From IMG/VR virus record IMGVR_UViG_3300032285_004054, positions 1-64,000 of that record: a stretch of DNA of 64,000 bases; one strand, 5' to 3'. Under the pieces are notes generated by a model, which ran no database searches, was not told the DNA's origin, and worked only from the letters and a program-made list of their open reading frames with translations. Shown piece after piece: positions 1,547 to 50,137 of the stretch (position 1 is the stretch's first letter; the number at the start of each line of letters is the position of its first letter). The position numbers were made by a program, and so were the translations under genes.

Positions 1547-1565
1547 ATAGATATATTTATCTTAT

Positions 1566-1594
1566 AGTCTATATGCTTTAAGAGGACTTGTCAA
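1566..1594 (-). promoter_or_regulatory. sigma70-type early promoter
   Basis: TTGACA-17nt-TAGACT. Confidence 0.8.
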
Positions 1595-3486: not shown

Positions 3487-3517
3487 GATTTAATATTATA
3501 GGGTTCTTTAGGACAGC

Positions 3518-3739
3518 TCAAGCATCATCTTGCCAGCTCTCTCGCTCTTCAAAGTCTTCTCGATCAGCCCAACCTTCTTCAAAGATATAATCAGTCAATG
3601 CTTGTATCTCATTTGCTTTAGGGTTCCTACCGTCTTGCCGTCGAATACCTACACCTTTCGGATCGAGTATAAAGAAGTAATCAACTCCCTTAAAGGTAAT
3701 CTCTTTGATTTCGTTATTGCTGGATGAAAATTTATGCAT
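3518..3739 (-). CDS. hypothetical protein
   Basis: Probable start MHKFSS at 3739. Confidence 0.65.
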   Translation of the reverse strand: MHKFSSSNNEIKEITFKGVDYFFILDPKGVGIRRQDGRNPKANEIQALTDYIFEEGWADREDFEERESWQDDA

Positions 3740-6955: not shown

Positions 6956-7165
6956 ACGTCTATTATGGATTCTGGGCAAAGGAACCACAAGCAAAATTTT
7001 CTGCTTGATTCATTTTTTGATATTTCTATCATCAAGGAACAATGAAAAAGTACATATCTTTGATTTCCTACACAACTGCAATTATACTAAGTTTACTACT
7101 TTGGTACTTTGCAATTAAAGGTTTGATTTACTTGTTTGTTTACATTACAGAATAAGTAATATGTA

Positions 7166-7393
7166 ATGGCTACAATTAAGCATTTTGGCGGACAAGATTA
7201 CAAAGTCCTTCACAAAGGGAAGGAATACGGACCTATGTCTATAGAAGACGCTAGAGAGAAAGTAGCTGAAATTGAAGAAGGCGAACGTAACCTTACACCA
7301 GATGAGGTAGCAGCAGGATTTGCTGAAATGAGAAGAAAGTTAAATGGCGAAAGCTTCAGCCAATTTTTTAAATCACGTCAAGTAGACCTTTAA
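7166..7393 (+). CDS. hypothetical protein
   Basis: ORF preceded by ATAAGTA; convergent overlap with next gene. Confidence 0.7.
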   Translation: MATIKHFGGQDYKVLHKGKEYGPMSIEDAREKVAEIEEGERNLTPDEVAAGFAEMRRKLNGESFSQFFKSRQVDL

Positions 7394-7757
7394 AGCTGTC
7401 TCTTGTTTCAGGAGAAAGCATCTTCTCAAGAAAAGATTGCGCAGTTATATTCTGAACAGGTGATAGAGCTTCATTTGTAGCTTTAAATCTATTAAAGATA
7501 GCCCAGAGTATATCATCATATGAACCGTATGTACCATCTTTAAATACCATTTGTAGAACATTGTCTTCTTTCTTTAAAGAATCTTCGTAATCCGAATGTA
7601 CAGCATCTTTAAAGTTACACTTAGGTTGATTACTATAATGTAACGCTAAAACAATCTTATGATAGAATAGAGCTTTAACTTTAACATCGCCATACTTGTC
7701 TTTGTCAAGTGATACATCATCATCAAATGTAATAGTTAATAGGATAGGGTCTTTCAT
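7368..7757 (-). CDS. C-terminal-tag family protein 5
   Basis: Ends LSPETRDSFKGLLDVI. Confidence 0.8.
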   Translation of the reverse strand: MKDPILLTITFDDDVSLDKDKYGDVKVKALFYHKIVLALHYSNQPKCNFKDAVHSDYEDSLKKEDNVLQMVFKDGTYGSYDDILWAIFNRFKATNEALSPVQNITAQSFLEKMLSPETRDSFKGLLDVI

Positions 7758-8392
7758 TAGTCAAGTACGTCTAGTAAACCTCCAAATGCTTTAGCAGTAG
7801 GATCACTTAATTCATCTTTATAACTTTTATCAGTCATAGGGTAGATGTATCTAAAATTATCTGTTTTACCATTAGGGAACAATGTATGGTTCCAGCTTGT
7901 CTTCTTTTGTATGTCAACTGGGAAGCTATTTATGTTAAAATGCCTTGTATGAATAGGTTCAAAGAAGTATAGAGCATCATGATAGTTTATAAAGTTACCA
8001 CCTGTAAAGTATTCAATGTTCGTTTCAAGATCTTTTACTACAGCTAGGAAAGCTACTGTTGGTACTTTTGTTTTTTCAATACCTCTGACCTTAACAATAG
8101 GCCATAATTTTAATTGTAAGAACTTCCAATCATGTCTATAGATAGGAGTATTCTTATCGTAATCTTCGTAATCCTTATGTTTTGGATCTCTCATACGTAC
8201 CTGCTCAAATTGCAGCTGTGTAACTAATCTATAGATTAGTACTGCTTTTAATGCATCTAAAGATTTATGTTCAGTAAACGGCTTAAACGCTTGTTCGGTA
8301 TCTGATGACCAAACAGCAATACTCATAATACTATCAATTGTGCCTTGATAGTAATGACTCTTAATATCGTAATTTATATTGTTAGAGGACAT
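7757..8392 (-). CDS. C-terminal-tag family protein 4
   Basis: Ends LSDPTAKAFGGLLDVLD. Confidence 0.8.
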   Translation of the reverse strand: MSSNNINYDIKSHYYQGTIDSIMSIAVWSSDTEQAFKPFTEHKSLDALKAVLIYRLVTQLQFEQVRMRDPKHKDYEDYDKNTPIYRHDWKFLQLKLWPIVKVRGIEKTKVPTVAFLAVVKDLETNIEYFTGGNFINYHDALYFFEPIHTRHFNINSFPVDIQKKTSWNHTLFPNGKTDNFRYIYPMTDKSYKDELSDPTAKAFGGLLDVLD

Positions 8393-8780
8393 CTAATAAA
8401 CCTCCAAATGTTTCTTCAGTATCTTTTGAAAGAGACTTCTTTAGTATATAATTCTCTCTTTTTGCTAACGGCCACTCTTTATCGAGATATTCTTCAATTA
8501 TCTCTCTTTCTTCATAGTCTATAGGTTTACCTAGAACTCTATTACCGAACTCATCTTTTTCTAAATTGTAACAGCCTCCGTCATATCTGCGACCTCTGTC
8601 ATCTTCATCTTTCCATATGACTATATCTCGTTTACCGTCTAAGATTAGATACCAAGCCCAGTGCATGTTCTCAGGACCATCGCGATGCTTTTTAAGATCA
8701 ACAAATTCTATAGTAATACCAACAACATGATTGCCGCCATAACGATCTGTTGGGTATGTTGTTTTGTAAATATTACTCAT
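8382..8780 (-). CDS. C-terminal-tag family protein 3
   Basis: Ends LSKDTEETFGGLLDVL. Confidence 0.8.
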   Translation of the reverse strand: MSNIYKTTYPTDRYGGNHVVGITIEFVDLKKHRDGPENMHWAWYLILDGKRDIVIWKDEDDRGRRYDGGCYNLEKDEFGNRVLGKPIDYEEREIIEEYLDKEWPLAKRENYILKKSLSKDTEETFGGLLDVL

Positions 8781-9142
8781 ATAACGTCAAGTAGTCCTCC
8801 AAATGAATCTTTAGTTTTCTTAGACAGATGTTTCTCTATTTTATATTTTTCAATAGCTTTGTCAATTTGAGAGGATAATTCATCCAATGCACCAATATAA
8901 CCATCACCCTCATCTTTCATTCCTAAAACGTTTCTCCATTCTCCGTTTTGATATTTTGAATCAGTAGTCCAAGGCCATTCTCTAGTTTTGTTCCAAGTCA
9001 TCTTCAATCCATCAACTACAATATCGACAAGCATATCATCGGAGTAAGCCTGATTAGGTGAGTCTTCGTTGTAGTAGACATCACTCTTAATTTGTATATC
9101 GTACACTCTTTCTTTTGATTCAAAGAATTTCTTAAATGACAT
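8777..9142 (-). CDS. C-terminal-tag family protein 2 with capsid-targeting-like leader
   Basis: Starts MSFKKFFESK; ends LSKKTKDSFGGLLDVI. Confidence 0.8.
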   Translation of the reverse strand: MSFKKFFESKERVYDIQIKSDVYYNEDSPNQAYSDDMLVDIVVDGLKMTWNKTREWPWTTDSKYQNGEWRNVLGMKDEGDGYIGALDELSSQIDKAIEKYKIEKHLSKKTKDSFGGLLDVI

Positions 9143-9572
9143 CGATTAAACCTCCAAATGAATTTCTTGTATCTTTTGAGAGTGTTCTCTTTAGGTATTC
9201 ACTCTCTGGTTCTATTTTATAATCTTCATCTACTAACCCGTTCATTAAGTCTCTGTACTCTTCAGGAGCTACAAAGCGGGTAATCATATTCATAAATGTA
9301 GTGCTATCGCTTTTGCTGTCAAGCTTTATTTTTATAATCATTTTTCCATTGCCTATCTCATCCATGTCTATATTATTCACAACATCAATTCCTTTGATAT
9401 TATTACCGTAACCCTCCGGACCAGATCTAACAATATACTCAAAACGCTCAAATATATCTAGATTTGTTTTCTTTTGCCTCTCAGCTTCTTCTTCATTGAT
9501 ATACAATGTAACATAAACAACAGAGTCTAAAGACTCCGTCAGTAGAAGTTTCAATGCATGATCAAGATTCAT
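9132..9572 (-). CDS. C-terminal-tag family protein 1
   Basis: Starts MNLDHALKLLLTES; ends LSKDTRNSFGGLIDVI. Confidence 0.8.
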   Translation of the reverse strand: MNLDHALKLLLTESLDSVVYVTLYINEEEAERQKKTNLDIFERFEYIVRSGPEGYGNNIKGIDVVNNIDMDEIGNGKMIIKIKLDSKSDSTTFMNMITRFVAPEEYRDLMNGLVDEDYKIEPESEYLKRTLSKDTRNSFGGLIDVI

Positions 9573-9576
9573 ACAT

Positions 9577-9582
9577 TATTTA
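9577..9582 (-). promoter_or_regulatory. T4-type late promoter core (TAAATA) for the tag operon
   Basis: TAAATAATGTATG, identical 13-mer to the one at 39931-39943. Confidence 0.7.
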
Positions 9583-9583
9583 A

Positions 9584-9612
9584 TTGCTTTTGCAGACGTT
9601 CCAATATACTAT
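9584..9612 (+). promoter_or_regulatory. sigma70-type early promoter
   Basis: TTGCTT-17nt-TACTAT-6nt-ATG. Confidence 0.75.
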
Positions 9613-9618
9613 AGTGTC

Positions 9619-10473
9619 ATGTCAAAACTTTTAATCATAGGAGATGTCCATAATCATTGGGTACATGCTCAATCGATTATTGATAAGTACAAGGATACCC
9701 ATAAGATTATCCTGATCGGAGACTACTTCGATAACTTTGGTGATACAGCTTTAGATGCTAAGCAAACAGCTACCTGGCTTAAGGAAACTATTCATACTGA
9801 TAACGTTATTGCTCTTATGGGTAACCACGATATCCATTATTCTCCCTACAGTACAGTAAAGAGTAGAACAAATACTCATCAGCTTTATAGTTGTTCAGGA
9901 TATTCTCCTGCGAAGGATGATATCATTTCGACTGTACTTACTGATGAGGATTGGAGGAGGATTAAGATCTATCATTACGAGAATGGATGGCTTTTTAGTC
10001 ACGGGGGGTTTCATCCATTCTGGATTGAGCATCCTATACTTGGTACAAAGATTGAACATATCCAATCTCTGATGGAGAAGGCCCAGCACGAGCTTGAAGA
10101 TAAAACGTTTTCTGCTATTCTAGGTACTGCCGGACGCTGTCGTGGTGGGTCGGCTCGTGCAGGAGGTATCTTGTGGATGGATCATCAACAAGAAGCTATC
10201 CCTATGAGAGATATTAAGCAGGTATATGGACATACACCTGTACGTAAAGGTATTGATATCTACGAAGATAACGGAGGTATTAACATCGACGTTGACTGTG
10301 GCCTTGAAGAAGTGCTTGAAATCAACGAAGATGGTTCCTATAACATAATCAAAACCAGCTTTGATAATTTTTATAATGAATCAGAAAGGAAGCTTCGAGA
10401 GGAGCAACAGAAAATTTTAAAACAGAAGTATTCTTCTCTCGGAGCTTACGATGACATTTATAAGAACATATAA
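9619..10473 (+). CDS. calcineurin-like metallophosphoesterase
   Basis: GDVHN, GDYFD, GNHD, SHGG, GHTP motifs. Confidence 0.9.
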   Translation: MSKLLIIGDVHNHWVHAQSIIDKYKDTHKIILIGDYFDNFGDTALDAKQTATWLKETIHTDNVIALMGNHDIHYSPYSTVKSRTNTHQLYSCSGYSPAKDDIISTVLTDEDWRRIKIYHYENGWLFSHGGFHPFWIEHPILGTKIEHIQSLMEKAQHELEDKTFSAILGTAGRCRGGSARAGGILWMDHQQEAIPMRDIKQVYGHTPVRKGIDIYEDNGGINIDVDCGLEEVLEINEDGSYNIIKTSFDNFYNESERKLREEQQKILKQKYSSLGAYDDIYKNI

Positions 10474-20037: not shown

Positions 20038-20044
20038 TTATTAC

Positions 20045-20077
20045 GGAGGCTTAAATAAATAATACAGACAAGCCTCC
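20045..20077 (+). promoter_or_regulatory. late promoter inside a hairpin abutting the start codon
   Basis: GGAGGCTT-AAATAAATAATACAGAC-AAGCCTCC-T-ATG. Confidence 0.65.
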
Positions 20078-20078
20078 T

Positions 20079-30258: not shown

Positions 30259-30954
30259 ATGTCTAAAGCTGTAGTTGTTTATTCCGGTGGGATGGATAGT
30301 ACTGTTCTACTTGAACATTGTATTAAGAACCATGATGAAGTTTATGTATTAACGTTTGATTATAATCAGCGTCATAAGAAAGAAGTTCATGTAGCTGAAG
30401 GTTATATGTATCAGCACCACAGCTATCAGGGATCTAAAGTTAAAGAGCATAAGATTGTCGATTTGTCTTTCTTTGCTGCAATTGCTAAGTCTGCTATTAC
30501 CGATCAAACTATTGAAGTACCGAAGATGAAAGACATCATCGGTGAAGCTCAAAGTGTTACATATGTACCGAATAGGAATATGATGATGCTTTCTATTGCT
30601 TGTTCATATGCTGAAACAGTAGGTGCATCTGATGTTTATTACGGAGCTGTAGCTGTAGATAATCTAAGCGGGTACTGGGACTGCACTAGCGAGTTCGTAG
30701 ATAGTATTAATAATCTATTAGCTCTTAATCGAATGAATCGTATCACAGTTCAGGCTCCTCTTCTGTTTAAGTCTAAGAAAGAGATTATTGAGATGGGAGC
30801 CGAACTCGGTGTTGACTTCACTAGAACCTGGACTTGCTATAAAGGCGAAGAAGTAAGCTGTGGTACGTGTCCGTCGTGTGCTGCGAGAGTAGCAGGATTT
30901 AAAAAGGCAGGAATAGTTGATCCTTTAGAATACGCTATTAATATTAATTGGTAA
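30259..30954 (+). CDS. queC: 7-cyano-7-deazaguanine synthase
   Basis: SGGMDST, DYNQRH, YVPNRN, Y.DC, TWTCY..CGTCPSC..R. Confidence 0.95.
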   Translation: MSKAVVVYSGGMDSTVLLEHCIKNHDEVYVLTFDYNQRHKKEVHVAEGYMYQHHSYQGSKVKEHKIVDLSFFAAIAKSAITDQTIEVPKMKDIIGEAQSVTYVPNRNMMMLSIACSYAETVGASDVYYGAVAVDNLSGYWDCTSEFVDSINNLLALNRMNRITVQAPLLFKSKKEIIEMGAELGVDFTRTWTCYKGEEVSCGTCPSCAARVAGFKKAGIVDPLEYAININW

Positions 30955-35645: not shown

Positions 35646-36080
35646 TTACCAAGTCAGGGTATCAGGATCTAATACCTGTACCAATTCAATACCGAAGTCT
35701 TTAGCTATAGCATAAGGATCATAGTCCTCAGTAGCTTTGTATAGTTTTCTATAAACTATCTTCTTAACTCCGTAACTTGCTATTGTCTTTAGACAATCAT
35801 TACAAGGGGTATGAGTAACAGCAGCTAGGTAACATTCACCAGGCTTAACCATTCGGAAGCAATTAATTTCAGCATGAATAACTCTTTTATGCTTCTCTTC
35901 TCTATTGCTCCATTCAATCTCAACGCCCGGAGGAGCTCCGTTATAACCTAGGCTTGCTACGGTATGATCATGACGAAGAAGACAACAACCTACTTTAGTT
36001 CGAGGATCTTCTGAACGTAGAGCAGCAACTTCAGCTAAACGAAGAGCATACTCTTCCCAGCTAAGTCTTTCAGTTCTCAT
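35646..36080 (-). CDS. dCMP deaminase
   Basis: W.EY....A...A.RS.DP..KVG, GYNG.P.G, HAE.N, PCNDC. Confidence 0.9.
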   Translation of the reverse strand: MRTERLSWEEYALRLAEVAALRSEDPRTKVGCCLLRHDHTVASLGYNGAPPGVEIEWSNREEKHKRVIHAEINCFRMVKPGECYLAAVTHTPCNDCLKTIASYGVKKIVYRKLYKATEDYDPYAIAKDFGIELVQVLDPDTLTW

Positions 36081-36084
36081 ACGT

Positions 36085-36492
36085 TTATTTATCATAATAC
36101 GTGCCGTCACCTCCAGACCAAATAACCTTCTTAAACTCAAAATATCGAAGAAGATTCTCGCAAGACATACAAGGTTTAGCCATCGCTATGTTACCATTAC
36201 GATCATAACGAATATTAACTAAAGTACATTTCTTTGTATCTATATTTGTCTTACGTTTAAGCTTTAAGATAGCATTAAACTCTGAACATCTAAACTTCTG
36301 ATCTGAATAATCCTCACCTGTAATCTTAGATATCTTTCTGTTAACTAGATTAACAGGGTGGGTCTTTCTAGAGTTCGTACCAATAGAAATTAAACGATTC
36401 TTATTAAGAATAAAAGAGATATGCTGACAACGATTACCGTTATCTTCAACAAGAGACAAAGCAATTTCTTCTAATCGTTTATAATCAAGCAT
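36085..36492 (-). CDS. divergent deaminase-fold protein
   Basis: H...I....IS.G.N, CSE (in place of HAE), AKPCMSC. Confidence 0.75.
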   Translation of the reverse strand: MLDYKRLEEIALSLVEDNGNRCQHISFILNKNRLISIGTNSRKTHPVNLVNRKISKITGEDYSDQKFRCSEFNAILKLKRKTNIDTKKCTLVNIRYDRNGNIAMAKPCMSCENLLRYFEFKKVIWSGGDGTYYDK

Positions 36493-37099
36493 TACCGGTA
36501 AGTGTAACTGCTTCAGTATTATGTTGCAAGAAAATATTCCACTCCTCTATTTTATATCTGTTCTTAATATAGCTTGTCAGCGGTAAGTACTTTGGCTCGG
36601 TAGGTTCCTTTAGGAGTTTAAGATTAGCTTCCTCCGGTGTTCTATTAGCTTTCATAGCATTAATGTCTCTATGAGTTAGTACACAATTCTTCCAATCAGT
36701 CTTACCACCTCTTGAACGAGGTATAATATGATCAACGTTACCTGTTTTTGAATTAACCTTAACACCCGTATAAGCACATTTACCACCATCTCTGGCCCAA
36801 ATACCTTTCATAGAGAACTTCGGTCTCTTCTTCGGTACTTGATTATATTTACAGAGTACAATTATTTTAGGTACTTTAATATTACCTCGAACAGTCTTTA
36901 TGCATTCTTCGTCTTCATTTATATCGAGGTTAATCCATTCATTCCATTTACAAGGATACATATCGTCCTTGCCAAGAATATGCAGCCCTGTTGCAGAGCC
37001 AGAGTACATCATAGATAAAGCATCTGCTACTGACTTGACATGAATAGCCTGCCAATTACGGTTTAGTACTAAAACCGTTTCCCTGTCCAGTAAACTCAT
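36485..37099 (-). CDS. HNH endonuclease (McrA-like)
   Basis: VLVLN..W, RD...CAYTG, VDHIIPRSRGG...W.N.V, N..KANRTPEEA. Confidence 0.9.
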   Translation of the reverse strand: MSLLDRETVLVLNRNWQAIHVKSVADALSMMYSGSATGLHILGKDDMYPCKWNEWINLDINEDEECIKTVRGNIKVPKIIVLCKYNQVPKKRPKFSMKGIWARDGGKCAYTGVKVNSKTGNVDHIIPRSRGGKTDWKNCVLTHRDINAMKANRTPEEANLKLLKEPTEPKYLPLTSYIKNRYKIEEWNIFLQHNTEAVTLTGNA

Positions 37100-37602
37100 T
37101 TTAGTATCCCAATATATGGTAGATTGCGATAGTAGCCCTGGTAATCAAGTCCATAACCAATGACAAATTGATCTTGGATTTTAAAACAGTAATAGTCTGG
37201 TTCAATAGAGCTTTCACGTGGTACTTCTTTATTTAGTAGCACGCACGTTTTTATTTCGTTTGCTCCTAAATCTTTTAGCTTTTTTATTATAGTTTGAAAT
37301 GTTAACCCGGTGTCGTATATATCATCAACGAGTAATACGTTCTTATCCTTTACATTCAATGTACCTTCTACATCTACTTTACCTGTTGAAGTTGTTCCGC
37401 CTTTATAGCTCGACGCTCTAGTAGATTGTACAGTAATAGGTATTGTTAGCTCTCTAATAAGATCCATGGCGAACATTGCGCCGCCCTCTAATACAGGTAC
37501 AACAATAACTCCCTTTTCGTCGTAATCTTTACTAATTTGCTTTCCTAGCTTCTTAACCCTTGAACGAATACTCCATGCACTGAATAATTTCTTACATTTC
37601 AT
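37096..37602 (-). CDS. hpt: hypoxanthine phosphoribosyltransferase
   Basis: VL.GG.MF..DL.R, SSY, VLLVDDIYDTGLT, F.IGYGLDY...YRNLPYI. Confidence 0.92.
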   Translation of the reverse strand: MKCKKLFSAWSIRSRVKKLGKQISKDYDEKGVIVVPVLEGGAMFAMDLIRELTIPITVQSTRASSYKGGTTSTGKVDVEGTLNVKDKNVLLVDDIYDTGLTFQTIIKKLKDLGANEIKTCVLLNKEVPRESSIEPDYYCFKIQDQFVIGYGLDYQGYYRNLPYIGILK

Positions 37603-37944: not shown

Positions 37945-39933
37945 TTATAAAATACCTAAAAGGTCTTCAAAAGATCCTTTTGTTTCGTCAGACATATTAT
38001 CTAGTATGTCTAAGTCTTCTAACTCTTTCTTTATCTTTTCGTCTGAATCAAACTTAGTACTATCCCCGTCATATTTTAATCCTTCTTGACGTGCAATGCC
38101 TCTCAGTGTTGTAAGAGGGTTATTACTAAAATCATAATAAACACGATATGATTTATCATTATTGAGAAGTTTTTTAGGAGAACCTACAAGACTGGAGAGT
38201 TGATTGTTAGCTATATCTATCATCGAACCGCCTATCTCTTCTGGTAACCCTTCTAAAGATCTTAAATGGTTATTTGTTAAAGCTATATTACCGCCAATTG
38301 TACTTGGTGCACCTTTTACGCTTGTTAATGATTTACACTTTCTTACTACTAGATCACCTGTAATTGTTGATGGACAACCTTCTAGGCTTTGTAAACTAAT
38401 ACAATCATCAATATATATACCAGGTATAGTAGCAGGTAGACCTTTTAAACTTGCAAGGTTTTTACAGTTACCAATAATATATTTTGTATCATTCCTGCCA
38501 CGTACTCTAATTTCTTGAGTTATACCTGTTAAGTCAAATATACCTAAATTGTCTAGTCGTACGCTACCTAAACAAGACTGAGGTAAACCTTCTAAACTTT
38601 TTAATCTCATGCAATCAGCTATAAAAATACTACCTTTAACAGGAACAGAAGCTCCTTTTAAATCTGTTATCTTTAAATTTCTTAATTCAAGTCTATGAGT
38701 ACTATAAGCACTATCAGGTTCTGCTTCAGCACAAGTTGCAGGCATTCCTTTTAAGCTAGTTATATTTGTTTCTTTACCGTCTATATCTATAGTACCGGTA
38801 ACAGCCATAGGTAAGAACGATAAATCATTTAATTGTTGAAAAGGTGTTTGTGTAACAATTTTAGAATTTTCTCTATAGCCATCTTTAGCATCATTAACAT
38901 CAAAAATAAAACTACCATCAACAATATAATTTTTAAACGAATACGGATTACTAAGTCCTACTTCAAAGTATCTTACATCACCTTTAATAACTTTATTACC
39001 TCTTTCTTCAACTACACGGAAGACATTTTCAATTAGATACTCATCTGTAACTTTTGTTCTATTTATTTTTGTATGTTGATTATACGAAGCGTATACTTTT
39101 AACATCGTATCTTTTACTTTAGCGATACTTTGTTTTGTTACACCTAAATCTTCTGGAGCAAATAGTTCATCAGTTCTATTAACAACCGGAAAACGTATTA
39201 CATATTTTATAGGTACTAAAGATTCTAAAAGATAAGGTGTATTTGTATCTCCGTAATCTCCAATATATCTAGTAATTTTTAAAGTACCTTTTGGTTTAAG
39301 AGTCTTTTCAGGTAACCTATTTCTTCTCATGAAGACTAGCTTACCTGGCAGTATAGGTTCAAACCCAGTTTTATTCTTAATGCTATCGTCTATTGTGTAA
39401 TCTTTTGTAGCTAGAATTATATTAACCCATTGACCGTTTTTAGCTTTTACTTCTAAAGGTTGATCAAGCCATTTAAAACCTATAATAGGGTTTGTTATAA
39501 CCTGTTTAACAGCTTCTTCTATATCAGGTTTAGATTCATAGTCAGTAGGTACGTTAGCATTATTAGCTGCTTGTTTGAATCCATAATCATGTGGATCAAT
39601 ATCTACTGTAGGATCGGTATACTTCTTAGCTACTTGTAAGTCTTTAAAAGGACCGAAGATGAATTGACTATGAATAGGTACAACAGCTCCATCTCCGAAC
39701 TTAATTGCAAACTTGGAATAAGCTCCTGGTACATTTTTATAACCTACAACTTCACCTACTTGGTTAAGATAGGGAAGAGCTTTCTTAGAGTGATAAGATA
39801 GATACCCCATTCCAGGAGCATCTCTAACGACAACTATATTACCGTTATTAAACTTAGCACGAGGAGGAGGCGCGATGTAATCATCGACCTTAAAAACCGG
39901 TACTGCTTCTTCGATGTACTCCTTAAAGGACAT
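37945..39933 (-). CDS. LRR-like repeat protein with capsid-targeting-like leader and C-terminal tag
   Basis: MSFKEYIEEA; L.SL.G.P..I.G repeats; ends MSDETKGSFEDLLGIL. Confidence 0.85.
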   Translation of the reverse strand: MSFKEYIEEAVPVFKVDDYIAPPPRAKFNNGNIVVVRDAPGMGYLSYHSKKALPYLNQVGEVVGYKNVPGAYSKFAIKFGDGAVVPIHSQFIFGPFKDLQVAKKYTDPTVDIDPHDYGFKQAANNANVPTDYESKPDIEEAVKQVITNPIIGFKWLDQPLEVKAKNGQWVNIILATKDYTIDDSIKNKTGFEPILPGKLVFMRRNRLPEKTLKPKGTLKITRYIGDYGDTNTPYLLESLVPIKYVIRFPVVNRTDELFAPEDLGVTKQSIAKVKDTMLKVYASYNQHTKINRTKVTDEYLIENVFRVVEERGNKVIKGDVRYFEVGLSNPYSFKNYIVDGSFIFDVNDAKDGYRENSKIVTQTPFQQLNDLSFLPMAVTGTIDIDGKETNITSLKGMPATCAEAEPDSAYSTHRLELRNLKITDLKGASVPVKGSIFIADCMRLKSLEGLPQSCLGSVRLDNLGIFDLTGITQEIRVRGRNDTKYIIGNCKNLASLKGLPATIPGIYIDDCISLQSLEGCPSTITGDLVVRKCKSLTSVKGAPSTIGGNIALTNNHLRSLEGLPEEIGGSMIDIANNQLSSLVGSPKKLLNNDKSYRVYYDFSNNPLTTLRGIARQEGLKYDGDSTKFDSDEKIKKELEDLDILDNMSDETKGSFEDLLGIL

Positions 39934-40438: not shown

Positions 40439-41929
40439 TTATTCTCCTCCCTTCATGATCTTAACGACCTTAGGTAGTGTAGTCTTTAAGAACTTCTCCT
40501 TAATAGCAGGATCGTAATTCCAGTGTTGGAGGAATTCCATAGTACCTGCAAATTGCTTTGTAGGTAGATCTGTTCTAAGGTTAGTCCAAAGAATGGTTAC
40601 CCATTCAGGGTGTAGATGATTACTAAGTGTAGCTAATCCTGCGAGTATATCCAGGTCATCCTGTGTAGGTTCTTTACCTCCTGCTACATCATTTGTAACA
40701 ACTCTAACCTTATTAATGAAGAAAGATACGAGAGCATTAAGCTTGTTAATGTTAGACTTATCAACATATGAATCAGGATTAGCTAACATATGCTTAATAT
40801 CAAATGAACGAAGATGCTGAATGAATTCAACGAACTTAGCACCCCACTTCCAACCACACTTAGCAGAAGCATATGTATTGATAAGCTTGTAGAGACCTAC
40901 TTCATTAGCTCTACCGTTTTGCTCATCTTCGTAATACTTCTCGTAAATCTTCTTTAAGATCTTTGTTAAAGCTTTAAAGCTACGAGGTGAAGGAGCGCCA
41001 CTATTAGCTTTTGGCTTATAGATGAAATTCTCTTCAGGAGCTGATTTAACGAAAGCAACAATACGAGGATCAATCTTAGCGTGTTCGGCCCACTTAAGCC
41101 ATTCATGTGGATCAGCTACTAGTACACCGGCTGTAAAACGAGATGTTAAAGCTTCTTCAAGTTCATCATCTCTATCTGTTAGGTTACCAGCACCCATTAC
41201 AGCGATTTCACTACCTAATTGTTCGTCACCGATTTGACGTTCTTCAGAGTTAACAACGGAATAAAGAGACTGACGTACGTCTTGACGACCTTGATTAATT
41301 TCGTCAAAGAAAAGAATACCATCAGCTTCAGGACGAGTTACAAAAGCAATCCAGTCCATCTTTTTATACTGTAAGAAGTCTTCAGGTGATGTTAGATTAG
41401 GAATACCTGAGAAGTCAGAAGGTTCCAGACGCTTTGTTCTTACGTCAACAAGTACGAAATATTGTGTAGGGTTCTTGATATACTCAGCCTTTTGAGCTGC
41501 ACTTGATCTATTCCATTCAGCGAACTTTTTACCTTTTTGCTTAGATATAGCATCACCGATATTCTTAATAATAGCACTCTTACCGATACCAGGTTCACCG
41601 TATATAAGTAATGGTTCTTTTGTATCGTAGGATAAATTGACCATCATGTAGAAGGTCTTATAATCCATCTCAGGGAGATCTGTCTCCATATAAGGACGGA
41701 TAGCAGGGTCATCCATCGCACGAATATTGTCGAGATCAGGATTATCAACAGGTAGCTTAGGAGGATTTTGATTTAAGCTCTGTACTAAACCGGCTCCTTG
41801 TTGAGCAGTTTGTGCTGCTTGTGGATTTGAAGGAGCAGGAGCTGCAGCAGCTGCTTTTGGTTTAGGAGCTTCATTTAGTATGTTACTATAAGCTTCCTGT
41901 AAAGACATAATATCCTTAAAAAGTTTCAT
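40439..41929 (-). CDS. MoxR-type AAA+ ATPase
   Basis: GEPGIGKS, EP.DF.G.P, ILFFDEIN, AGN, AL.SRF, SPRS; TATAAATA upstream. Confidence 0.9.
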   Translation of the reverse strand: MKLFKDIMSLQEAYSNILNEAPKPKAAAAAPAPSNPQAAQTAQQGAGLVQSLNQNPPKLPVDNPDLDNIRAMDDPAIRPYMETDLPEMDYKTFYMMVNLSYDTKEPLLIYGEPGIGKSAIIKNIGDAISKQKGKKFAEWNRSSAAQKAEYIKNPTQYFVLVDVRTKRLEPSDFSGIPNLTSPEDFLQYKKMDWIAFVTRPEADGILFFDEINQGRQDVRQSLYSVVNSEERQIGDEQLGSEIAVMGAGNLTDRDDELEEALTSRFTAGVLVADPHEWLKWAEHAKIDPRIVAFVKSAPEENFIYKPKANSGAPSPRSFKALTKILKKIYEKYYEDEQNGRANEVGLYKLINTYASAKCGWKWGAKFVEFIQHLRSFDIKHMLANPDSYVDKSNINKLNALVSFFINKVRVVTNDVAGGKEPTQDDLDILAGLATLSNHLHPEWVTILWTNLRTDLPTKQFAGTMEFLQHWNYDPAIKEKFLKTTLPKVVKIMKGGE

Positions 41930-41945
41930 ATTAATCGTATATTAT

Positions 41946-43796
41946 TTATACGTCGACAGGGAATACTTTGCCCTTTTTCTCTAAAATGTCGTATCTACCA
42001 TCACCATTAACCATGAAAATTAGATTCTTTTGAGGGTTCTTAACTTCAGGTAATTGAGGATTATCTTCAACGTAACCGTCAGTGAAGTAAATGATATTAT
42101 CGACCTTTGTTATTTTTAAATGATCTAGTAATTTCTTAACACTTGACATTAAAGTGCCGCCTTCCTTAACAGGGAGCTGTTTAACCTTGGCCATAATAGC
42201 AGGTACAGATGATTTTTTACTATTTACAATCTCGTGATAATAAGCATTAACATTCCAAAGAATGAGCATTAATTCTACTTCCTTAAACTGTTTTAATAAC
42301 TGGAAAATATAACCAATATAGATGCTAAGCACTTCATCGTTAATAGAACCACTTGTATCGATAGCAATAATGGTTTTAACCTTCTCTTGCTCTTTTATAG
42401 TGCGTCCTTGATAAACAAGATTAGATGCTCCTCTACTACCTGTAGCAGCAGCCATTCTAATATTAGGCTTGGACATATCAGATCTTAGCTGATTAGAAGG
42501 TTTAATAACATCCTTTAAGATTTGTCTCCAATCTACTTTAACCTTTTCTTCACCGAACTTATTACGAAAACCGCCTTCAGCATTACCTCTGTTAGAGGCC
42601 TGTTGCTTAGCTCGATCAACCTTATTCCTCATATCGGCTTTCTTTTGAGCTTCAGTTGTCCCTGGTGCAGGCTGGTTCTTATTGTAGATAGGGTTATCTG
42701 AAGGCATATTAACTTGTCCCGGAGATCCCTTACCTGCTGTAATATGCTTATCGAGTTGTTCTTGTTTACCTGCTAGTGATTCTTTGAATGTAGTATCGTC
42801 TTTTAAGCCTTGGTCTTCTTTTTGTTGACCGCCTTGTCCCTGACCTTTACCTTGTTGTTGCTGTTGATCGTCTTGTCCTTGGCCCTGACCTTCTTGTTCG
42901 TTGCCTTGTTGACCTTGAGCTTGTTGATCACCTTGCCCAGGCTGTGGTTGCCCGCTTTGACCTTGACCAGGCTGTGGTTGCCCGCTTTGACCTTGACCTT
43001 GTTGAGAGTTGCCTTGTTGATTCTGATTCTGGTTACCTTTCTTCTTCTCTTGTTCGTTGTCGAGCTTCTCAAATACCTTGTAAAGCTCTTCAGCTGTCAT
43101 GTCGGTAATGTCTGTACCTGCTACCTCCATAGCATGTTCCATAGGAGGTAGTACCCAACGACCACCTTCCTGTAGCGGTAGACAGCCAATAGAAGGAAGT
43201 TTATAACCAGACTCAAGAATATCTCTATTCATGACGAAGTCAGTAGCAACGTTCCAGAGTGTATGATCTTTGCGACCTTTTCTAAAGAATGTATTATTAG
43301 CAATGTGAAGAGTCTCGTGTAATAGAACACCAATAACTTCTTCGTAAGAAAGCTGCTTTAAAGCAAAATTGGGATTAATATAGATATTCCCGTAATCATC
43401 TACACCCATTGTAGGTACATCGTATGTAACTACTGTTTTAAGATTCTGTAATAGAATACCATAGTAAGGAGCGCGCTTATAAAGTTCGTAACGTGCTCTT
43501 GTTAGAAGGTTATCGAGTCTTGTAAGCTCATCTGTAGAAAGTTCTTGATACTGATTCTCTTGAGAGTTAAGCGCGACATCGAGCTGTCTTTCAATTTCAT
43601 CAATCTGCTCATCAGACATCCCTTGTTTCTTTAATTCCTTTCTCTGCTTATCAGACATCTTATAAGGCTCACCAGGCTTTCTAGGGTTAGGATTTTCGTT
43701 AACCTCGGTTAATAGCCTACTTTGAGGTAATCTAGCTTCAAAAATCAATCTAGAATAGACACTCGAAAGCTGTTTGTCTTCTTTTCTATAGTACAT
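41946..43796 (-). CDS. metallopeptidase + VWA domain protein (DUF2201-type)
   Basis: T.GVD..G.IY.NP.F, HETLH, WN.A.D; Q/G linker; IDTSGSI, GGT, FTDG MIDAS. Confidence 0.9.
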   Translation of the reverse strand: MYYRKEDKQLSSVYSRLIFEARLPQSRLLTEVNENPNPRKPGEPYKMSDKQRKELKKQGMSDEQIDEIERQLDVALNSQENQYQELSTDELTRLDNLLTRARYELYKRAPYYGILLQNLKTVVTYDVPTMGVDDYGNIYINPNFALKQLSYEEVIGVLLHETLHIANNTFFRKGRKDHTLWNVATDFVMNRDILESGYKLPSIGCLPLQEGGRWVLPPMEHAMEVAGTDITDMTAEELYKVFEKLDNEQEKKKGNQNQNQQGNSQQGQGQSGQPQPGQGQSGQPQPGQGDQQAQGQQGNEQEGQGQGQDDQQQQQGKGQGQGGQQKEDQGLKDDTTFKESLAGKQEQLDKHITAGKGSPGQVNMPSDNPIYNKNQPAPGTTEAQKKADMRNKVDRAKQQASNRGNAEGGFRNKFGEEKVKVDWRQILKDVIKPSNQLRSDMSKPNIRMAAATGSRGASNLVYQGRTIKEQEKVKTIIAIDTSGSINDEVLSIYIGYIFQLLKQFKEVELMLILWNVNAYYHEIVNSKKSSVPAIMAKVKQLPVKEGGTLMSSVKKLLDHLKITKVDNIIYFTDGYVEDNPQLPEVKNPQKNLIFMVNGDGRYDILEKKGKVFPVDV

Positions 43797-45651: not shown

Positions 45652-46258
45652 ATCTAATTATATTGCACCAGGTGCTCAATCTAGGCGCTAAATTAAACTT
45701 TATTTAACCTCAATACTAATATTGTGTACCTCCGGTTTCACAACAGGTACCTTAACTCGTAGTAACCCGTCTGTGTATGTTGATGAGATGTTCTTAACGT
45801 CCGTATTGTCATTAAGCGTGAAGGACAATTGTCCCTTCCTACGGCTAATGCCTTTACGATGGAAGTGTATAGTCTCATCATGTTCGACCTCTTCCTTATT
45901 AACTGCAATCAAGAGTTTACCTTCCTTGACTGTTACGTTAATATTTTCCTTTCCTACGCCAGCCAATGCTACTTCGATGTAGTAGGTGACCGGATTACCG
46001 TCTGGATCGGTTTCTGATACGATGTTATAAGGATAGACTGCATTTGGAATATCAAATGCTTTATCGAAGTCCTTAAAGACATCACTTAGCCAGCTTTCAT
46101 TAAACAGAGCTGGGAGGTGGCTGTACCCCGCGCCCTGGGCAGGAACGAGCCTGCCGACTGTGTATGGTGTTATTGTTGTTGTCATATTTTTTCTCCTTTA
46201 TTAAGCGAGTTAATATGTTTGCTTTAGGTCTGATTGAGCACCTGAGCAAATATAATTA
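45652..46258. repeat. imperfect inverted repeat pair flanking hsp20
   Basis: Perfect core CAGGTGCTCAATC (45669-45681) / GATTGAGCACCTG (46232-46244), extending imperfectly to ~30 bp. Confidence 0.8.
45700..46185 (-). CDS. small heat shock protein Hsp20
   Basis: YPYNI, Y.IE.ALAG..K..I.V....L.I, GIS.R....F.L, DGLL.V.VP; AAGGAG SD. Confidence 0.93.
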   Translation of the reverse strand: MTTTITPYTVGRLVPAQGAGYSHLPALFNESWLSDVFKDFDKAFDIPNAVYPYNIVSETDPDGNPVTYYIEVALAGVGKENINVTVKEGKLLIAVNKEEVEHDETIHFHRKGISRRKGQLSFTLNDNTDVKNISSTYTDGLLRVKVPVVKPEVHNISIEVK

Positions 46259-49177: not shown

Positions 49178-50137
49178 CTAGATTATATCTATTAACCCCT
49201 TAAAAGTATTTTTTGTCTTCGGTGTTAATTTGTTAATAATGGACTTCTTTAGAACATATCTCTTCATAGGTTCTTTATAAGTGTAATGTTTAGCAAAGTA
49301 TTTACAGAAGTCATCCTCTGAATAATCTCTTATTTGTCCTTTTTCTTTTTCTATTTTTAAAACGTTTAACGAGTTATTATATACATCATCTAAAAGCTTC
49401 TTATCTGTCTGCATATTATCTAGTATTCGATCCCAGACATCAAAATTGTCTTCGTCATCGTCTTCTTTGTAATCGTCAATCATACATACTATAGCATCTT
49501 CTATAGCTAGCTTAAACACTGCATCGCTTACAGAATTTTCTACAAGAATTGAACCGACTATACTGTTAAAGCTTTCTTTCATAGGTATCTTGCTAAACTC
49601 TTGATCTAGATAATTACTTATTTCTTCATCTGATTTAAAAAGACTAGATTGTAATCTAATAGCTATACCACCTTTATTGTTCCAAGCATCTACATAAGGA
49701 GGGAAATCATCGATAAGAACATTCGGTGTACCATCTTCGTTTATAGCGTAAATTGATTTGTTTTGAGGATACTCAACACCTTTAAAATACTTTCCGTACT
49801 TCGGTATAATATGCTTCTTAATCCATTCACTTTTTCCCTTCTTGCATTCTTCTATATCAATACTCGCAGGATGAGAACAAATCTTAAAAGAACCAAACTT
49901 CTCTATAACTTTTCTTATTAAAGCGTCATTAGTAGGGTATGGTTCAAGGTTTGCAAATACCTCGTAAACATCACCTAGATGATTGTGAAACTCTTGTTTA
50001 TCTTTCCAGATCTTTCTAGCTTCTTGCTTCTCTTCTGGTGTAATATCTTTATAATCTTTATGATATAACTTATGCGCTATTGTATCGAACAAGTTTGCAA
50101 GCAAACCGTCCATATCAAGATAGCAAATAGGGTTCAT
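49178..50137 (-). CDS. HAD 5'(3')-nucleotidase-like domain fused to tagged C-terminal domain
   Basis: YLDMDGLLA, K..W, K..YA, LIDD, W...GG; ends LTPKTKNTFKGLIDII. Confidence 0.85.
   Translation of the reverse strand: MNPICYLDMDGLLANLFDTIAHKLYHKDYKDITPEEKQEARKIWKDKQEFHNHLGDVYEVFANLEPYPTNDALIRKVIEKFGSFKICSHPASIDIEECKKGKSEWIKKHIIPKYGKYFKGVEYPQNKSIYAINEDGTPNVLIDDFPPYVDAWNNKGGIAIRLQSSLFKSDEEISNYLDQEFSKIPMKESFNSIVGSILVENSVSDAVFKLAIEDAIVCMIDDYKEDDDEDNFDVWDRILDNMQTDKKLLDDVYNNSLNVLKIEKEKGQIRDYSEDDFCKYFAKHYTYKEPMKRYVLKKSIINKLTPKTKNTFKGLIDII

What the first reader, a model, noticed from the sequence alone, without database searches (positions are those of the whole stretch)
7368..9572. Unrelated late proteins share a conserved C-terminal tag: candidate cargo-sorting system
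Five tandem, overlapping genes with no visible similarity in their bodies end in LSPETRDSFKGLLDVI, LSDPTAKAFGGLLDVLD, LSKDTEETFGGLLDVL, LSKKTKDSFGGLLDVI and LSKDTRNSFGGLIDVI. The same tag ends two distant proteins: the LRR-like protein 37945-39933 (MSDETKGSFEDLLGIL) and the HAD fusion 49178-50137 (LTPKTKNTFKGLIDII). Consensus is [LM][ST]xxTxx[STA]F[GKE][GD]L[LI][DG][VI][IL] at or within one residue of the C-terminus. Codons vary, so selection is at protein level. The operon and the LRR gene start with an identical late-promoter/start 13-mer (TAAATAATGTATG), and several members carry capsid-targeting-like leaders. Inference: a portable amphipathic address label that docks diverse effectors onto one receptor (prohead core, portal/ejection machinery or AAA+ chaperone) for packaging and injection. 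I know of no described phage C-terminal sorting tag of this form.
Basis: partly seen in the sequence, partly recalled or inferred. Interest (0 to 1): 0.92.

Follow-up and report, generated by a model that had tools for sequence, protein, structure and literature searches.

The report
Shared C-terminal tag on phage proteins
An uncultured, distantly T4-like giant phage puts the same short C-terminal peptide, and often the same N-terminal leader, on at least 24 otherwise unrelated proteins; this looks like a new protein address label whose destination is still unknown.

Summary
All seven window proteins end in [LM][ST]xxTxx[ST]F..L[LI][DG].[IL]. The window holds 7 regex matches, all terminal, against 0.035 expected by chance. 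The window is bases 1-64,000 of a 218.4-kb contig from an uncultured, very distant T4-like myovirus. About 95 kb of that genome carries 24 tagged genes. A profile search of 1.84 billion proteins found 31 hits, all C-terminal, from a few related uncultured jumbo phages.

Bodies are unrelated at sequence and profile level. One is a nucleotidase whose many homologues lack the tail, and one is an LRR protein. Synonymous sites in the tail are saturated, so selection acts on the protein.

- The Gly-Gly pair is largely a Shine-Dalgarno sequence, and Asp-Val holds the next gene's start codon.
- An N-terminal, T4-CTS-like leader is almost exclusive to tagged proteins.
- The tag also works internally in two fused multi-module proteins.
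- AlphaFold leaves both leader and tag unpacked.

A TAAATA late-promoter-like motif links the arrays to the structural genes. A portable docking tag is well supported. Virion or prohead cargo loading is the best guess, but it is unproven.

The parts
9132..9572 (-). g5, 146 aa, first gene of the five-gene array; tagged
   Evidence: tail HMM 51.8 bits, 0 aa from the stop
8777..9142 (-). g4, 121 aa, tagged; N-terminal leader MSFKKFFES
8382..8780 (-). g3, 132 aa, tagged
7757..8392 (-). g2, 211 aa, tagged, with one extra Asp after the core
7368..7757 (-). g1, 129 aa, last gene of the array; tail reads FKG (no Shine-Dalgarno) because no coupled gene follows
37945..39933 (-). g6, 662 aa: leader MSFKEYIEE, an N-terminal region of unknown fold, leucine-rich repeats at about aa 350-640, then the tag; last gene after the VWA and MoxR genes
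49178..50137 (-). g7, 319 aa: NT5C 5'(3')-deoxyribonucleotidase (aa 1 to about 205), a unique acidic extension of about 110 aa, then the tag
7371..7418 (-). 16-aa core tag of g1. The equivalent cores are g2 7763-7810, g3 8385-8432, g4 8780-8827, g5 9135-9182, g6 37948-37995 and g7 49181-49228
9132..9158 (-). Dual-coded junction g5/g4. TTT GGA GGT (F-G-G) contains GGAGG at 9151-9155, and GAT GTC holds the ATG of g4 at 9140-9142. The same design recurs at g4/g3 (8777-8803), g3/g2 (8382-8408) and g2/g1 (7757-7786)
9570..9582 (-). TAAATAATGTATG: late-promoter-like TAAATA 4 nt before the g5 start codon
39931..39943 (-). An identical 13-mer at the g6 start codon

Best explanation
The tail is a portable linear docking peptide of about 16 aa. 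Its consensus is L-[ST]-[PK]-x-T-x-x-[ST]-F-x-[DG]-L-[IL]-D-x-[IL]. In most small members an amphipathic helix that belongs to the folded body precedes it. In about half the members it is paired with an N-terminal leader of about 10 aa, M-x-F-x-x-h-h-x-E. A small clade of uncultured, distantly T4-like jumbo myoviruses attaches it to a large and diverse set of accessory proteins, at least 24 in this genome. Most are small acidic single-domain proteins of many unrelated sequence types. The set also includes an LRR protein and a nucleotidase. The tail stays flexible in the free protein and most likely folds onto a groove of one common partner, so that all these proteins reach the same place.

The most likely destination is a virion assembly intermediate, either the prohead core or the capsid. 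In that case the family would be a C-terminal, or two-signal, counterpart of the T4 capsid-targeting sequence on the hypervariable internal proteins.

In the tandem arrays the same codons also drive translational coupling. F-G-G spells GGAGG, and D-V-[IL]-stop overlaps M-[SY]-F-[KN] of the next gene. The short exact DNA runs that result can seed unequal crossing-over, which would expand the arrays.

What is shown: the anatomy, portability, protein-level selection, C-terminal bias, dual coding, leader-tail linkage and the shared upstream motif. What is inferred: that the tail binds a partner. What is guessed: which partner. I put about 0.75 on a shared protein-level docking tag and about 0.35 on a virion or prohead destination.
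For: - Chance is excluded: 7 terminal matches against 0.035 expected.
- Of 1.84 billion representative proteins, 31 hit the 34-column profile at E <= 1e-3. Every hit has the module within 0-3 aa of its end.
- About 95 kb of this genome holds 24 tagged genes carrying 26 modules.
- 58 tagged proteins fall into 31 body clusters after iterative profile searches, and all 7 window proteins stay singletons. Profile-profile probabilities between clusters are <= 12 %, apart from one pair at 50 %.
- Body links are orthologue pairs between phages, so bodies are individually conserved.
- g7's enzyme domain is 55-64 % identical to more than 100 homologues of 184-248 aa, none with the tail.
- Synonymous sites are saturated: 0.457 observed against 0.432 expected.
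- In the AF2 model of h11 (pLDDT 78), the body at aa 11-100 is confident, the leader has pLDDT 41 and the tag 61 falling to 48. Both ends are unpacked.
- The leader occurs on 22 of 47 tagged and 3 of 219 untagged ORFs, p = 3e-16.
- Leaderless and tail-less orthologues exist: P0022, P0029 and k4.
- TAAATA lies 8-27 nt upstream of 20 of 80 genes, against about 2 expected. These include most fibre and virion genes, the g5 array, g6, h11, m3, m5 and k1.
- The phage is T4-like by its gp15-type tail gene and its fibres.
- Precedent: T-even internal proteins are highly diverse and share only a conserved CTS (PMC3012670; sequence MKTYQEFIAE).
Against: - No receptor, localisation, proteomic or expression data exist. 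No RNA run was listed and there is no cultured relative.
- Members are mostly acidic, with pI 4.5-5.7, whereas T4 internal proteins are described as highly basic.
- g7 lacks the TAAATA motif and has an early-like -10 element.
- The MoxR and VWA genes also carry TAAATA, so the regulon is not purely structural.
- The arrays sit in a run of tiny same-strand genes that looks like an early or host-takeover region.
- The head genes, prohead protease and scaffold lie in the roughly 120 kb I could not read. So I do not know whether a T4-type core and protease exist here.
- The helix before the tag is part of the body fold, and the two best-sampled body clusters have a similar order of secondary structure. 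Many small members could therefore be very old paralogues.
Confidence: 0.45

Rival explanations
1. This is an old, fast-diverging paralogue family. One small alpha/beta domain was amplified by tandem duplication and its middle has diverged beyond recognition. The conserved leader and tail are simply the structurally constrained ends of that fold. g6, g7 and h1 arose by fusion of such a unit to other domains. No sorting function is implied.
For: - Genes are tandem and overlapping, with exact junction runs of 20-31 nt able to drive unequal crossing-over.
- Leader and tail co-occur almost exclusively.
- The KAIxxWEhK helix belongs to the folded body.
- h11 and h5 show a similar order of strands and helices.
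- The largest cluster grows to 10 members with profiles.
- There is a weak g1~g2 similarity.
Against: - 31 body clusters remain after iteration, and hhalign gives <= 12 % for nearly all cluster pairs.
- In g7 the tail follows an NT5C enzyme and an acidic linker. In g6 it follows LRRs.
- The 16-aa core is unpacked in the model.
- The core is far better conserved than any body position. That fits a binding motif more than a fold edge.
- Orthologous bodies exist with and without the leader.
Confidence: 0.2
2. The tail is a docking peptide for a hub that is not part of the virion. Three candidates stand out. (a) The phage Hsp20 small heat-shock protein at 45700-46185, whose beta4-beta8 groove binds C-terminal I/L-x-I/V peptides. 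(b) The MoxR AAA+ / VWA pair at 40439-43796, whose VWA metal site could bind the conserved Asp; g6 lies in the same gene string. (c) A replication hub, as with the clamp-binding tails of T4 gp33, gp43 and gp55 or the partners of the gp32 tip.
For: - An Hsp20 gene with its own C-terminal I-S-I motif is present, and 32 of 62 tails have [IL]-x-[VI] at +4 to +6.
- Asp at +5 occurs in 50 of 62 tails, flanked by hydrophobic residues.
- g6 lies directly downstream of the VWA and MoxR genes, and all three carry TAAATA.
- T4 really does use C-terminal acidic-hydrophobic tails as docking peptides: gp33 ends ...TLDFLL and gp32 ends ...DLDDLLNDL.
Against: - The L128 lineage ends in IDEL and part of the L134 lineage in INTIL, so neither fits I-x-I/V.
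- The T4 tails do not score against the tail HMM, and clamp, SSB and encapsulin regexes hit 0 of 62 tails.
- Nothing suggests why more than 24 small late proteins should load onto a clamp.
- Only g6 is linked to the MoxR-VWA genes.
Confidence: 0.2
3. The conservation is imposed at the nucleic-acid level. The tail is conserved because it carries the ribosome-binding site, the start codon and the first codons of the next gene, and because it acts as a recombination junction. It has no function of its own as a peptide.
For: - An SD-like core lies inside 22 of 31 tails followed by a coupled gene, against 2 of 18 isolated tails, p = 7e-5.
- The GGA codon and the preceding Ser codon show excess codon identity.
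- Tail end and next head co-vary between lineages: DVI*/MSFK, DVL*/MYFN, DEL*/MNFK.
- Exact runs of 20-31 nt occur at the junction.
Against: - 18 isolated tails, including g1, g6, g7 and m1-m6, keep the motif with no gene overlapping them.
- The invariant T and F and the L-S-P block lie upstream of the SD and start.
- Overall synonymous identity equals the codon-usage expectation, and Ser is encoded by both AGT and TCN.
- The internal copies in h1 have neither a stop nor a start.
Confidence: 0.05
4. Leader and tail are complementary docking elements, as in PKS/NRPS docking domains. The C-tail of one module binds the N-leader of another and strings the diversified modules into hetero-oligomers or a fibre-like assembly. 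The covalent three-module protein h1 would be the fused version.
For: - Leader and tail co-occur with near exclusivity.
- Both are unpacked in the monomer model.
- Multi-module fusions h1 and P0016 have the tail as an inter-module linker.
Against: - About half the tagged proteins have no leader.
- The internal junctions of h1 lack a leader.
- The two peptides show no charge complementarity.
- No multimer prediction was possible.
Confidence: 0.08

Closest known systems
T4 capsid targeting sequence (CTS) of the internal proteins IPI-III and Alt
   Same: A peptide of about 10 aa is the only thing shared by a highly diverse, fast-evolving set of accessory proteins of a T4-type phage, and it addresses them to the prohead core (PMC3012670). 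The leader here, M-x-F-x-x-h-h-x-E, resembles MKTYQEFIAE in position, length and amphipathic pattern, and has a hydrophobic-x-Glu at residues 7-10.
   Different: The CTS is N-terminal and is cleaved off. The element reported here is C-terminal, longer and has no sequence similarity to the CTS. T4 internal proteins are basic, whereas these proteins are acidic. Cleavage and packaging are untested, and no prohead protease gene lay in the DNA I could read.
Encapsulin cargo-loading peptides (own knowledge)
   Same: A short C-terminal peptide appended to unrelated cargo enzymes docks them on the inner face of an HK97-fold shell.
   Different: The Gly-Ser-Leu type consensus is absent from all 62 tails. 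No encapsulin-like shell gene is adjacent, and the host is a tailed phage.
C-terminal docking tails of T4 replication and late-transcription proteins (gp33, gp43 and gp55 on the gp45 clamp; the gp32 acidic tip)
   Same: Unrelated proteins of a T4-type phage share a short acidic-hydrophobic C-terminal peptide that plugs into one hub. gp33 ends ...TLDFLL and gp32 ends ...DLDDLLNDL.
   Different: There is no HMM score against these tails, and the clamp motif regex hits 0 of 62. The bearers here are small late proteins of unknown function, not DNA enzymes.
Small heat-shock protein I-x-I/V anchoring motif (own knowledge)
   Same: A C-terminal [IL]-x-[IV] peptide docks into the beta4-beta8 groove of an alpha-crystallin domain. 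The phage encodes an Hsp20 with its own I-S-I tail.
   Different: Only about half of the tails fit the motif, and the conserved part extends 12 residues further upstream.
Capsid-binding C-terminal modules of decoration and scaffolding proteins (T4 Hoc; the P22 scaffolding helix-turn-helix, own knowledge)
   Same: A conserved C-terminal element anchors a variable, exposed or transient protein to the capsid. A C-terminal fusion to Hoc weakens binding 500-fold (PMC3012670).
   Different: Those are single proteins and not a 24-member repertoire. There is no sequence similarity.
Mobile junction cassettes (PeSL) of T4-type hyperplastic regions (own knowledge)
   Same: Short conserved junctions between unrelated small ORFs allow modular shuffling. 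Here exact runs of 20-31 nt occur at the junctions.
   Different: PeSLs are non-coding promoter and stem-loop cassettes. Here the junction is coding on both sides and is selected mainly as protein.

Membership tests
T4-type capsid targeting sequence | Located at the extreme N-terminus, about 10 residues long | tested here: not met
   The reported tag is C-terminal. The separate leader does meet this feature on 22 of 47 tagged proteins.
T4-type capsid targeting sequence | Ends in a prohead-protease site, hydrophobic-x-Glu | tested here: inconclusive
   Leaders have [FLIVY]-x-E at residues 7-10. P3 is often F or V rather than L or I. Cleavage cannot be tested. The tail has no such site, except IDE-L in one lineage.
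T4-type capsid targeting sequence | The genome encodes a gp21-type prohead protease and a scaffolding core | not tested
T4-type capsid targeting sequence | Bearers are found in the virion | not testable with these tools
   There is no cultured relative and no proteome.
Encapsulin cargo-loading peptide | C-terminal Gly-Ser-Leu type consensus | tested here: not met
   0 of 62 tails match.
Encapsulin cargo-loading peptide | Adjacent encapsulin shell gene | tested here: not met
   No such gene lies next to any array.
Sliding-clamp-binding C-terminal tail (T4 gp33/gp43/gp55 type; bacterial QL[SD]LF) | Motif [ST]LDFL[FL] or QL[SD]LF at the C-terminus | tested here: not met
   0 of 62 tails match, and the T4 gp33 tail does not score against the tail HMM.
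SSB / gp32 acidic tip | A long disordered acidic or Ser-rich linker ending in an acidic-hydrophobic tip | tested here: not met
   The tail follows a folded helix directly. An acidic run of 3 or more occurs in 0 of 62 tails.
PDZ ligand or C-terminal degron | Fixed register relative to a free carboxylate | tested here: not met
   17 of 62 tails have 1-2 extra residues. Three internal copies exist. [DE]-x-hydrophobic-COOH occurs in only 37 of 62.
sHSP I-x-I/V client or anchoring motif | [IVL]-x-[IVL] near the C-terminus and an alpha-crystallin protein in the system | tested here: inconclusive
   An Hsp20 gene is present, but the motif fits only 32 of 62 tails.
Simple paralogue family | Bodies homologous along their length | tested here: not met
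   31 clusters remain after profile iteration, hhalign gives <= 12 % for nearly all pairs, and g7 and g6 have other known domains. At the level of fold the result is inconclusive.
Any curated protein family (Pfam, PHROGs, PADLOC, PDB) | A significant profile match | tested here: not met
   all gave no significant match.

The most novel reading that the evidence does not exclude
This is a two-signal cargo-loading system. An N-terminal CTS-like leader plus a C-terminal docking tail pack a rapidly diversifying arsenal of more than 24 effector or accessory proteins into, or onto, the head of a T4-like jumbo phage for delivery with the DNA. The arsenal includes an LRR protein and a nucleotidase. 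It would be the first C-terminal capsid-targeting peptide described in a tailed phage, convergent with encapsulin cargo peptides. The tag is also written so that each tail carries the ribosome-binding site and start codon of the next cargo gene, which makes the array self-extending.
Probability: 0.28. Interest if true: 0.85.

Novelty: new variant of a known kind. Interest (0 to 1): 0.62.

Why it matters
If the tail is an address label, it gives a ready-made list of more than 50 candidate virion-delivered or hub-bound effectors in a clade with no cultured member. It also gives a 16-30 aa handle that could be used to load foreign proteins, as the T4 CTS is used. It would show that the idea of diverse cargo sharing only a targeting peptide arose more than once and at the opposite end of the protein.

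Whatever the function, the junction is a clean natural example of triple coding: the tail of gene n, the Shine-Dalgarno and start of gene n+1, and the head of gene n+1. It is also a caution for motif hunters, because part of a protein consensus can really be an RNA signal.

Tried and rejected
- Megablast and tblastn against 50,697 deposited phages found no relative of the operon or of a family member. Best E-values were 1-10.
- The back-translated tag pattern was scanned in JGI metagenomes.
- The word-indexed protein search with g5 found only g5 itself. With the family alignment it found six proteins.
- Pfam, PHROGs, PADLOC and PDB sequence searches of family members gave nothing. A weak NKG2-D C-type-lectin hit (E = 0.0012) was not supported by Foldseek.
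- ESM Atlas searches of h11 and g2 gave scores below 0.8, which are uninformative. The g6 search only confirmed LRRs.
- I tested the idea that the tail mimics the gp32 tip or the gp33 clamp tail, using the real T4 sequences. There was no HMM score. No gp32 homologue lies in the DNA I hold.
- RNA evidence: no RNA run was listed. The DNA run only confirms the assembly.
- The second AF2 model (h5, 6-sequence alignment) reached only pLDDT 57. I used it only for its order of secondary structure and did not run a fold search on it.
- The sigma-70 promoter scan of the operon was no better than shuffles: 15 sites against 12.
Full report
**1. Observation**

A strict regular expression run over all six frames of the 64-kb window matches only these seven places, each 1-2 residues before a stop. 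In 200 first-order Markov simulations of the window the mean was 0.035 matches, and 0.005 terminal ones. An independent assembly of a public run reproduces 7000-10000 without a single difference, so the array is not an assembly artefact.

**2. What the genome is**

The window equals positions 1-64,000 of a 218,400-bp metagenomic contig. It encodes tail fibres, a T4 gp15-type tail sheath stabiliser (25-29 % identical to those of cyanophage and Aeromonas T4-likes), a GP38-like adhesin, queuosine-pathway enzymes, nucleotide enzymes, a MoxR-VWA pair and an Hsp20. No deposited phage is close to it. It is an uncultured, very distant T4-like jumbo myovirus.

**3. The family is much larger than seven**

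- A back-translated pattern found a second tandem array of eleven tagged genes on the same contig (L004 7233-12031).
- Six more tagged genes lie at contig positions of about 207-211 kb (L129).
- The roughly 95 kb I could read therefore holds 24 tagged genes carrying 26 modules.
- Apart from g6 and g7, they all lie in one small-gene region of about 35 kb that spans the contig ends.
- A 34-column profile of the module was searched without a word index against 1.84 billion representative proteins. It found 31 proteins at E <= 1e-3, each with the module 0-3 residues from its end.
- The hits come from a handful of related uncultured contigs of 211-218 kb and their fragments.
- 120 metagenome hits to the degenerate DNA pattern lacked the extended motif and are chance matches.
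- Pooled over three lineages there are 62 distinct tails. Phe is invariant. Thr at -4 occurs in 60 of 62, and Ser/Thr at -7 and -1 in 56 and 57. Leu at -8 occurs in 48, Leu at +3 in 52, Ile/Leu at +4 in 60, Asp at +5 in 50 and Leu/Ile at +7 in 60.

**4. Are the bodies unrelated?**

- With leader and tail removed, blastp, phmmer and three rounds of profile clustering leave 31 body clusters among 58 tagged proteins. Untagged ORFs from the same genomes served as decoys. All seven window proteins remain singletons.
- Profile-profile comparison between clusters gives at most 12 % probability, apart from one pair at 50 %.
- The links that do exist are orthologue pairs between phages, so each body is conserved in its own right.
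- g7 is decisive for portability. Its first 205 or so residues are an NT5C 5'(3')-deoxyribonucleotidase, 55-64 % identical to more than a hundred homologues of 184-248 aa. None of these has the tail. g7 alone has an extra acidic extension of about 110 aa that ends in the tag.
- g6 has leucine-rich repeats.
- The leader and the tail can each be absent from an otherwise orthologous body. P0022 and P0029 are leaderless. In k4 a frame break has separated the tail, which is still readable in the next 56 nt.

**5. Protein-level or DNA-level selection**

Where two tails share an amino acid they share the codon 45.7 % of the time, against 43.2 % expected from codon usage. Ser is encoded by both AGT and TCN.

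In tails followed by an overlapping gene, F-G-G is TTT GGA GGx, a GGAGG Shine-Dalgarno 8-11 nt before the next ATG. In addition, GAT GTC (D-V) contains that ATG. An SD-like core lies inside 22 of 31 such tails but only 2 of 18 isolated tails (p = 7e-5). Isolated tails read FKG, FED, FEG, FQD and the like. The tail end and the next protein's first four residues co-vary between lineages: DVI*/MSFK, DVL*/MYFN and DEL*/MNFK.

The Gly-Gly of the reported consensus is therefore mostly an RNA signal. This triple coding produces exact in-register runs of 20-31 nt between non-adjacent genes and between the two arrays. That is enough to seed unequal crossing-over, although the junctions are only 51 % identical overall.

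**6. A second conserved end**

An N-terminal leader, M-x-F-x-x-h-h-x-E, is present on 22 of 47 tagged ORFs and on 3 of 219 untagged ORFs (p = 3e-16). One of those three is k4. In position, length and pattern the leader resembles the T4 capsid targeting sequence MKTYQEFIAE, which is cleaved after Glu.

**7. Structure**

An AlphaFold2 model of h11, built with a 14-sequence alignment, reached pLDDT 78 and pTM 0.68.
- Residues 11-100 form a confident alpha/beta domain. Its last helix is the conserved KAIxxWEhK.
- The leader (residues 1-10, pLDDT 41) and the 16-aa core tag (pLDDT 61 falling to 48) are unpacked. That is how linear motifs that fold on binding usually appear.
- Foldseek finds no significant neighbour in the PDB or in BFVD.
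- A model of the second-largest cluster (h5) is poor, at pLDDT 57, but shows a similar order of strands and helices. A shared ancient fold for many small members cannot be excluded.

**8. A free C-terminus is not required**

A 321-aa protein (h1) is three modules in a row, with the tag twice internal and once terminal. P0016 has one internal and one terminal copy. 17 of 62 tails carry one or two extra residues. This argues against PDZ-type or degron readings, which need a fixed free carboxylate.

**9. Expression class**

TAAATA lies 8-27 nt upstream of 20 of 80 predicted gene starts, against about 2 expected. The 20 include most fibre and virion genes, the gp15-like gene and the MoxR and VWA genes, and also the g5 array and g6. 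The same motif precedes h11, h1, m3, m5 and k1. It resembles the T4 late promoter TATAAATA (established knowledge). g7 lacks it. No RNA run was listed, so timing remains an inference.

**10. Explanation**

The evidence supports a portable, protein-level, flexible C-terminal docking peptide, usually paired with an N-terminal leader. It sits on a large repertoire of otherwise unrelated proteins that share an upstream motif with the structural genes. The simplest function is to bring all of them to one partner.

In a T4-type phage the obvious precedent is the prohead core, which takes up a highly diverse set of internal proteins that share only the CTS (PMC3012670). That is my best guess, at about 0.35 for this destination and about 0.75 for a docking tag in general. 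Three facts count against it: members are acidic whereas T4 internal proteins are basic; g7 has a different upstream motif; and no head genes were available to inspect.

Other candidate hubs encoded nearby:
- The Hsp20, whose groove binds I-x-I/V tails. Only about half the tails fit.
- The MoxR-VWA pair next to g6.

T4's own C-terminal docking tails, gp33 ...TLDFLL and gp32 ...DLDDLLNDL, are the same kind of device but show no similarity by HMM or regex.

**11. Novelty**

No curated family, solved structure or deposited phage contains the module. Two literature searches on capsid-targeting sequences and on conserved C-terminal features of jumbo-phage paralogues listed no paper that, by title or abstract, describes a C-terminal tag of this kind. 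The principle of a short address peptide on diverse phage accessory proteins is known. This realisation of it is new: a C-terminal tag, paired with a leader, dual-coded with the translational coupling signals, and present on at least 24 genes in one genome.

Noticed in passing
L004:5202-6882 (same contig, next to the second array): Five tandem small minus-strand genes share a different N-terminal motif, ...[IL]-x-E-A-Y..., at residues 8-13. They may form a second family defined only by a leader.
   Followed up: no
P0036, P0037, P0040, P0048, P0049 (homologues of g7): In other phages the NT5C enzyme carries a different conserved C-terminal extension of about 50 aa. It is basic and Cys-containing (PGILKRQ.KGK.TCSKAR...AAQR..NY.HC). 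The same enzyme therefore bears different tails in different lineages.
   Followed up: partly
window, e.g. 13339, 20052, 23838, 27763, 34670, 50404, 53451, 60583 (+); 19601, 41943, 43805, 56615, 60527 (-): TAAATA lies 8-27 nt upstream of 20 of 80 genes, usually with no Shine-Dalgarno and only 2-14 nt from the ATG. It looks like a late-promoter motif that would give leaderless or very short-leader mRNAs.
   Followed up: partly
window 1547-1590, 1807-1850, 3487-3530 (upstream of small minus-strand genes): A recurrent motif, CCTAAAG.ATATAGACT.TAAGA or TATA(A/C)T-like, lies immediately before start codons of small genes. It may be a second (early?) promoter class. g7 and 9619-10473 have similar TATAGT elements.
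   Followed up: no
L128:2140-2444: Family member k4 has a leader and body but stops early. Its tail (...LSPNTLNTFGDLIDEL*) is still readable in another frame in the 56-nt gap before the next gene. This could be a fresh frameshift or a sequencing error.
   Followed up: partly
window 45700-46185 (-): An Hsp20/alpha-crystallin small heat-shock protein with its own C-terminal I-S-I-E-V-K tail. It is a candidate receptor for the tails.
   Followed up: partly
window 40439-43796 (-): A MoxR-type AAA+ ATPase (N4 gp24-like) and a DUF2201/VWA protein, both preceded by TAAATA. A 162-aa ORF and the tagged LRR protein g6 follow them.
   Followed up: partly
window 30259-30954 (+); L129:10752-11318: QueC and a PTPS/QueD-like gene are present. 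The phage probably makes a 7-deazaguanine DNA or tRNA modification.
   Followed up: no
window 35646-37602 (-): Two adjacent cytidine/dCMP-deaminase-like genes, an HNH endonuclease and a phosphoribosyltransferase lie just downstream of g6.
   Followed up: no
L134:3864-5090: An IS605 OrfB/TnpB (Cas12f-like) gene sits inside the small-gene region of a related phage.
   Followed up: no
L135:5811-9170: A related 213.8-kb phage encodes ribosomal protein S21, an RMF-like ribosome modulation factor and an Hc1-like protein near its tagged genes.
   Followed up: no
window 7166-7393 (+) versus 7368-7757 (-): A convergent 75-aa ORF overlaps the last 26 nt of g1, which is its tail, on the opposite strand.
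   Followed up: no
window 20040-20078 (+): The TAAATA motif upstream of the 1253-aa fibre gene lies in the loop of a perfect 8-bp stem (GGAGGCTT...AAGCCTCC).
   Followed up: no
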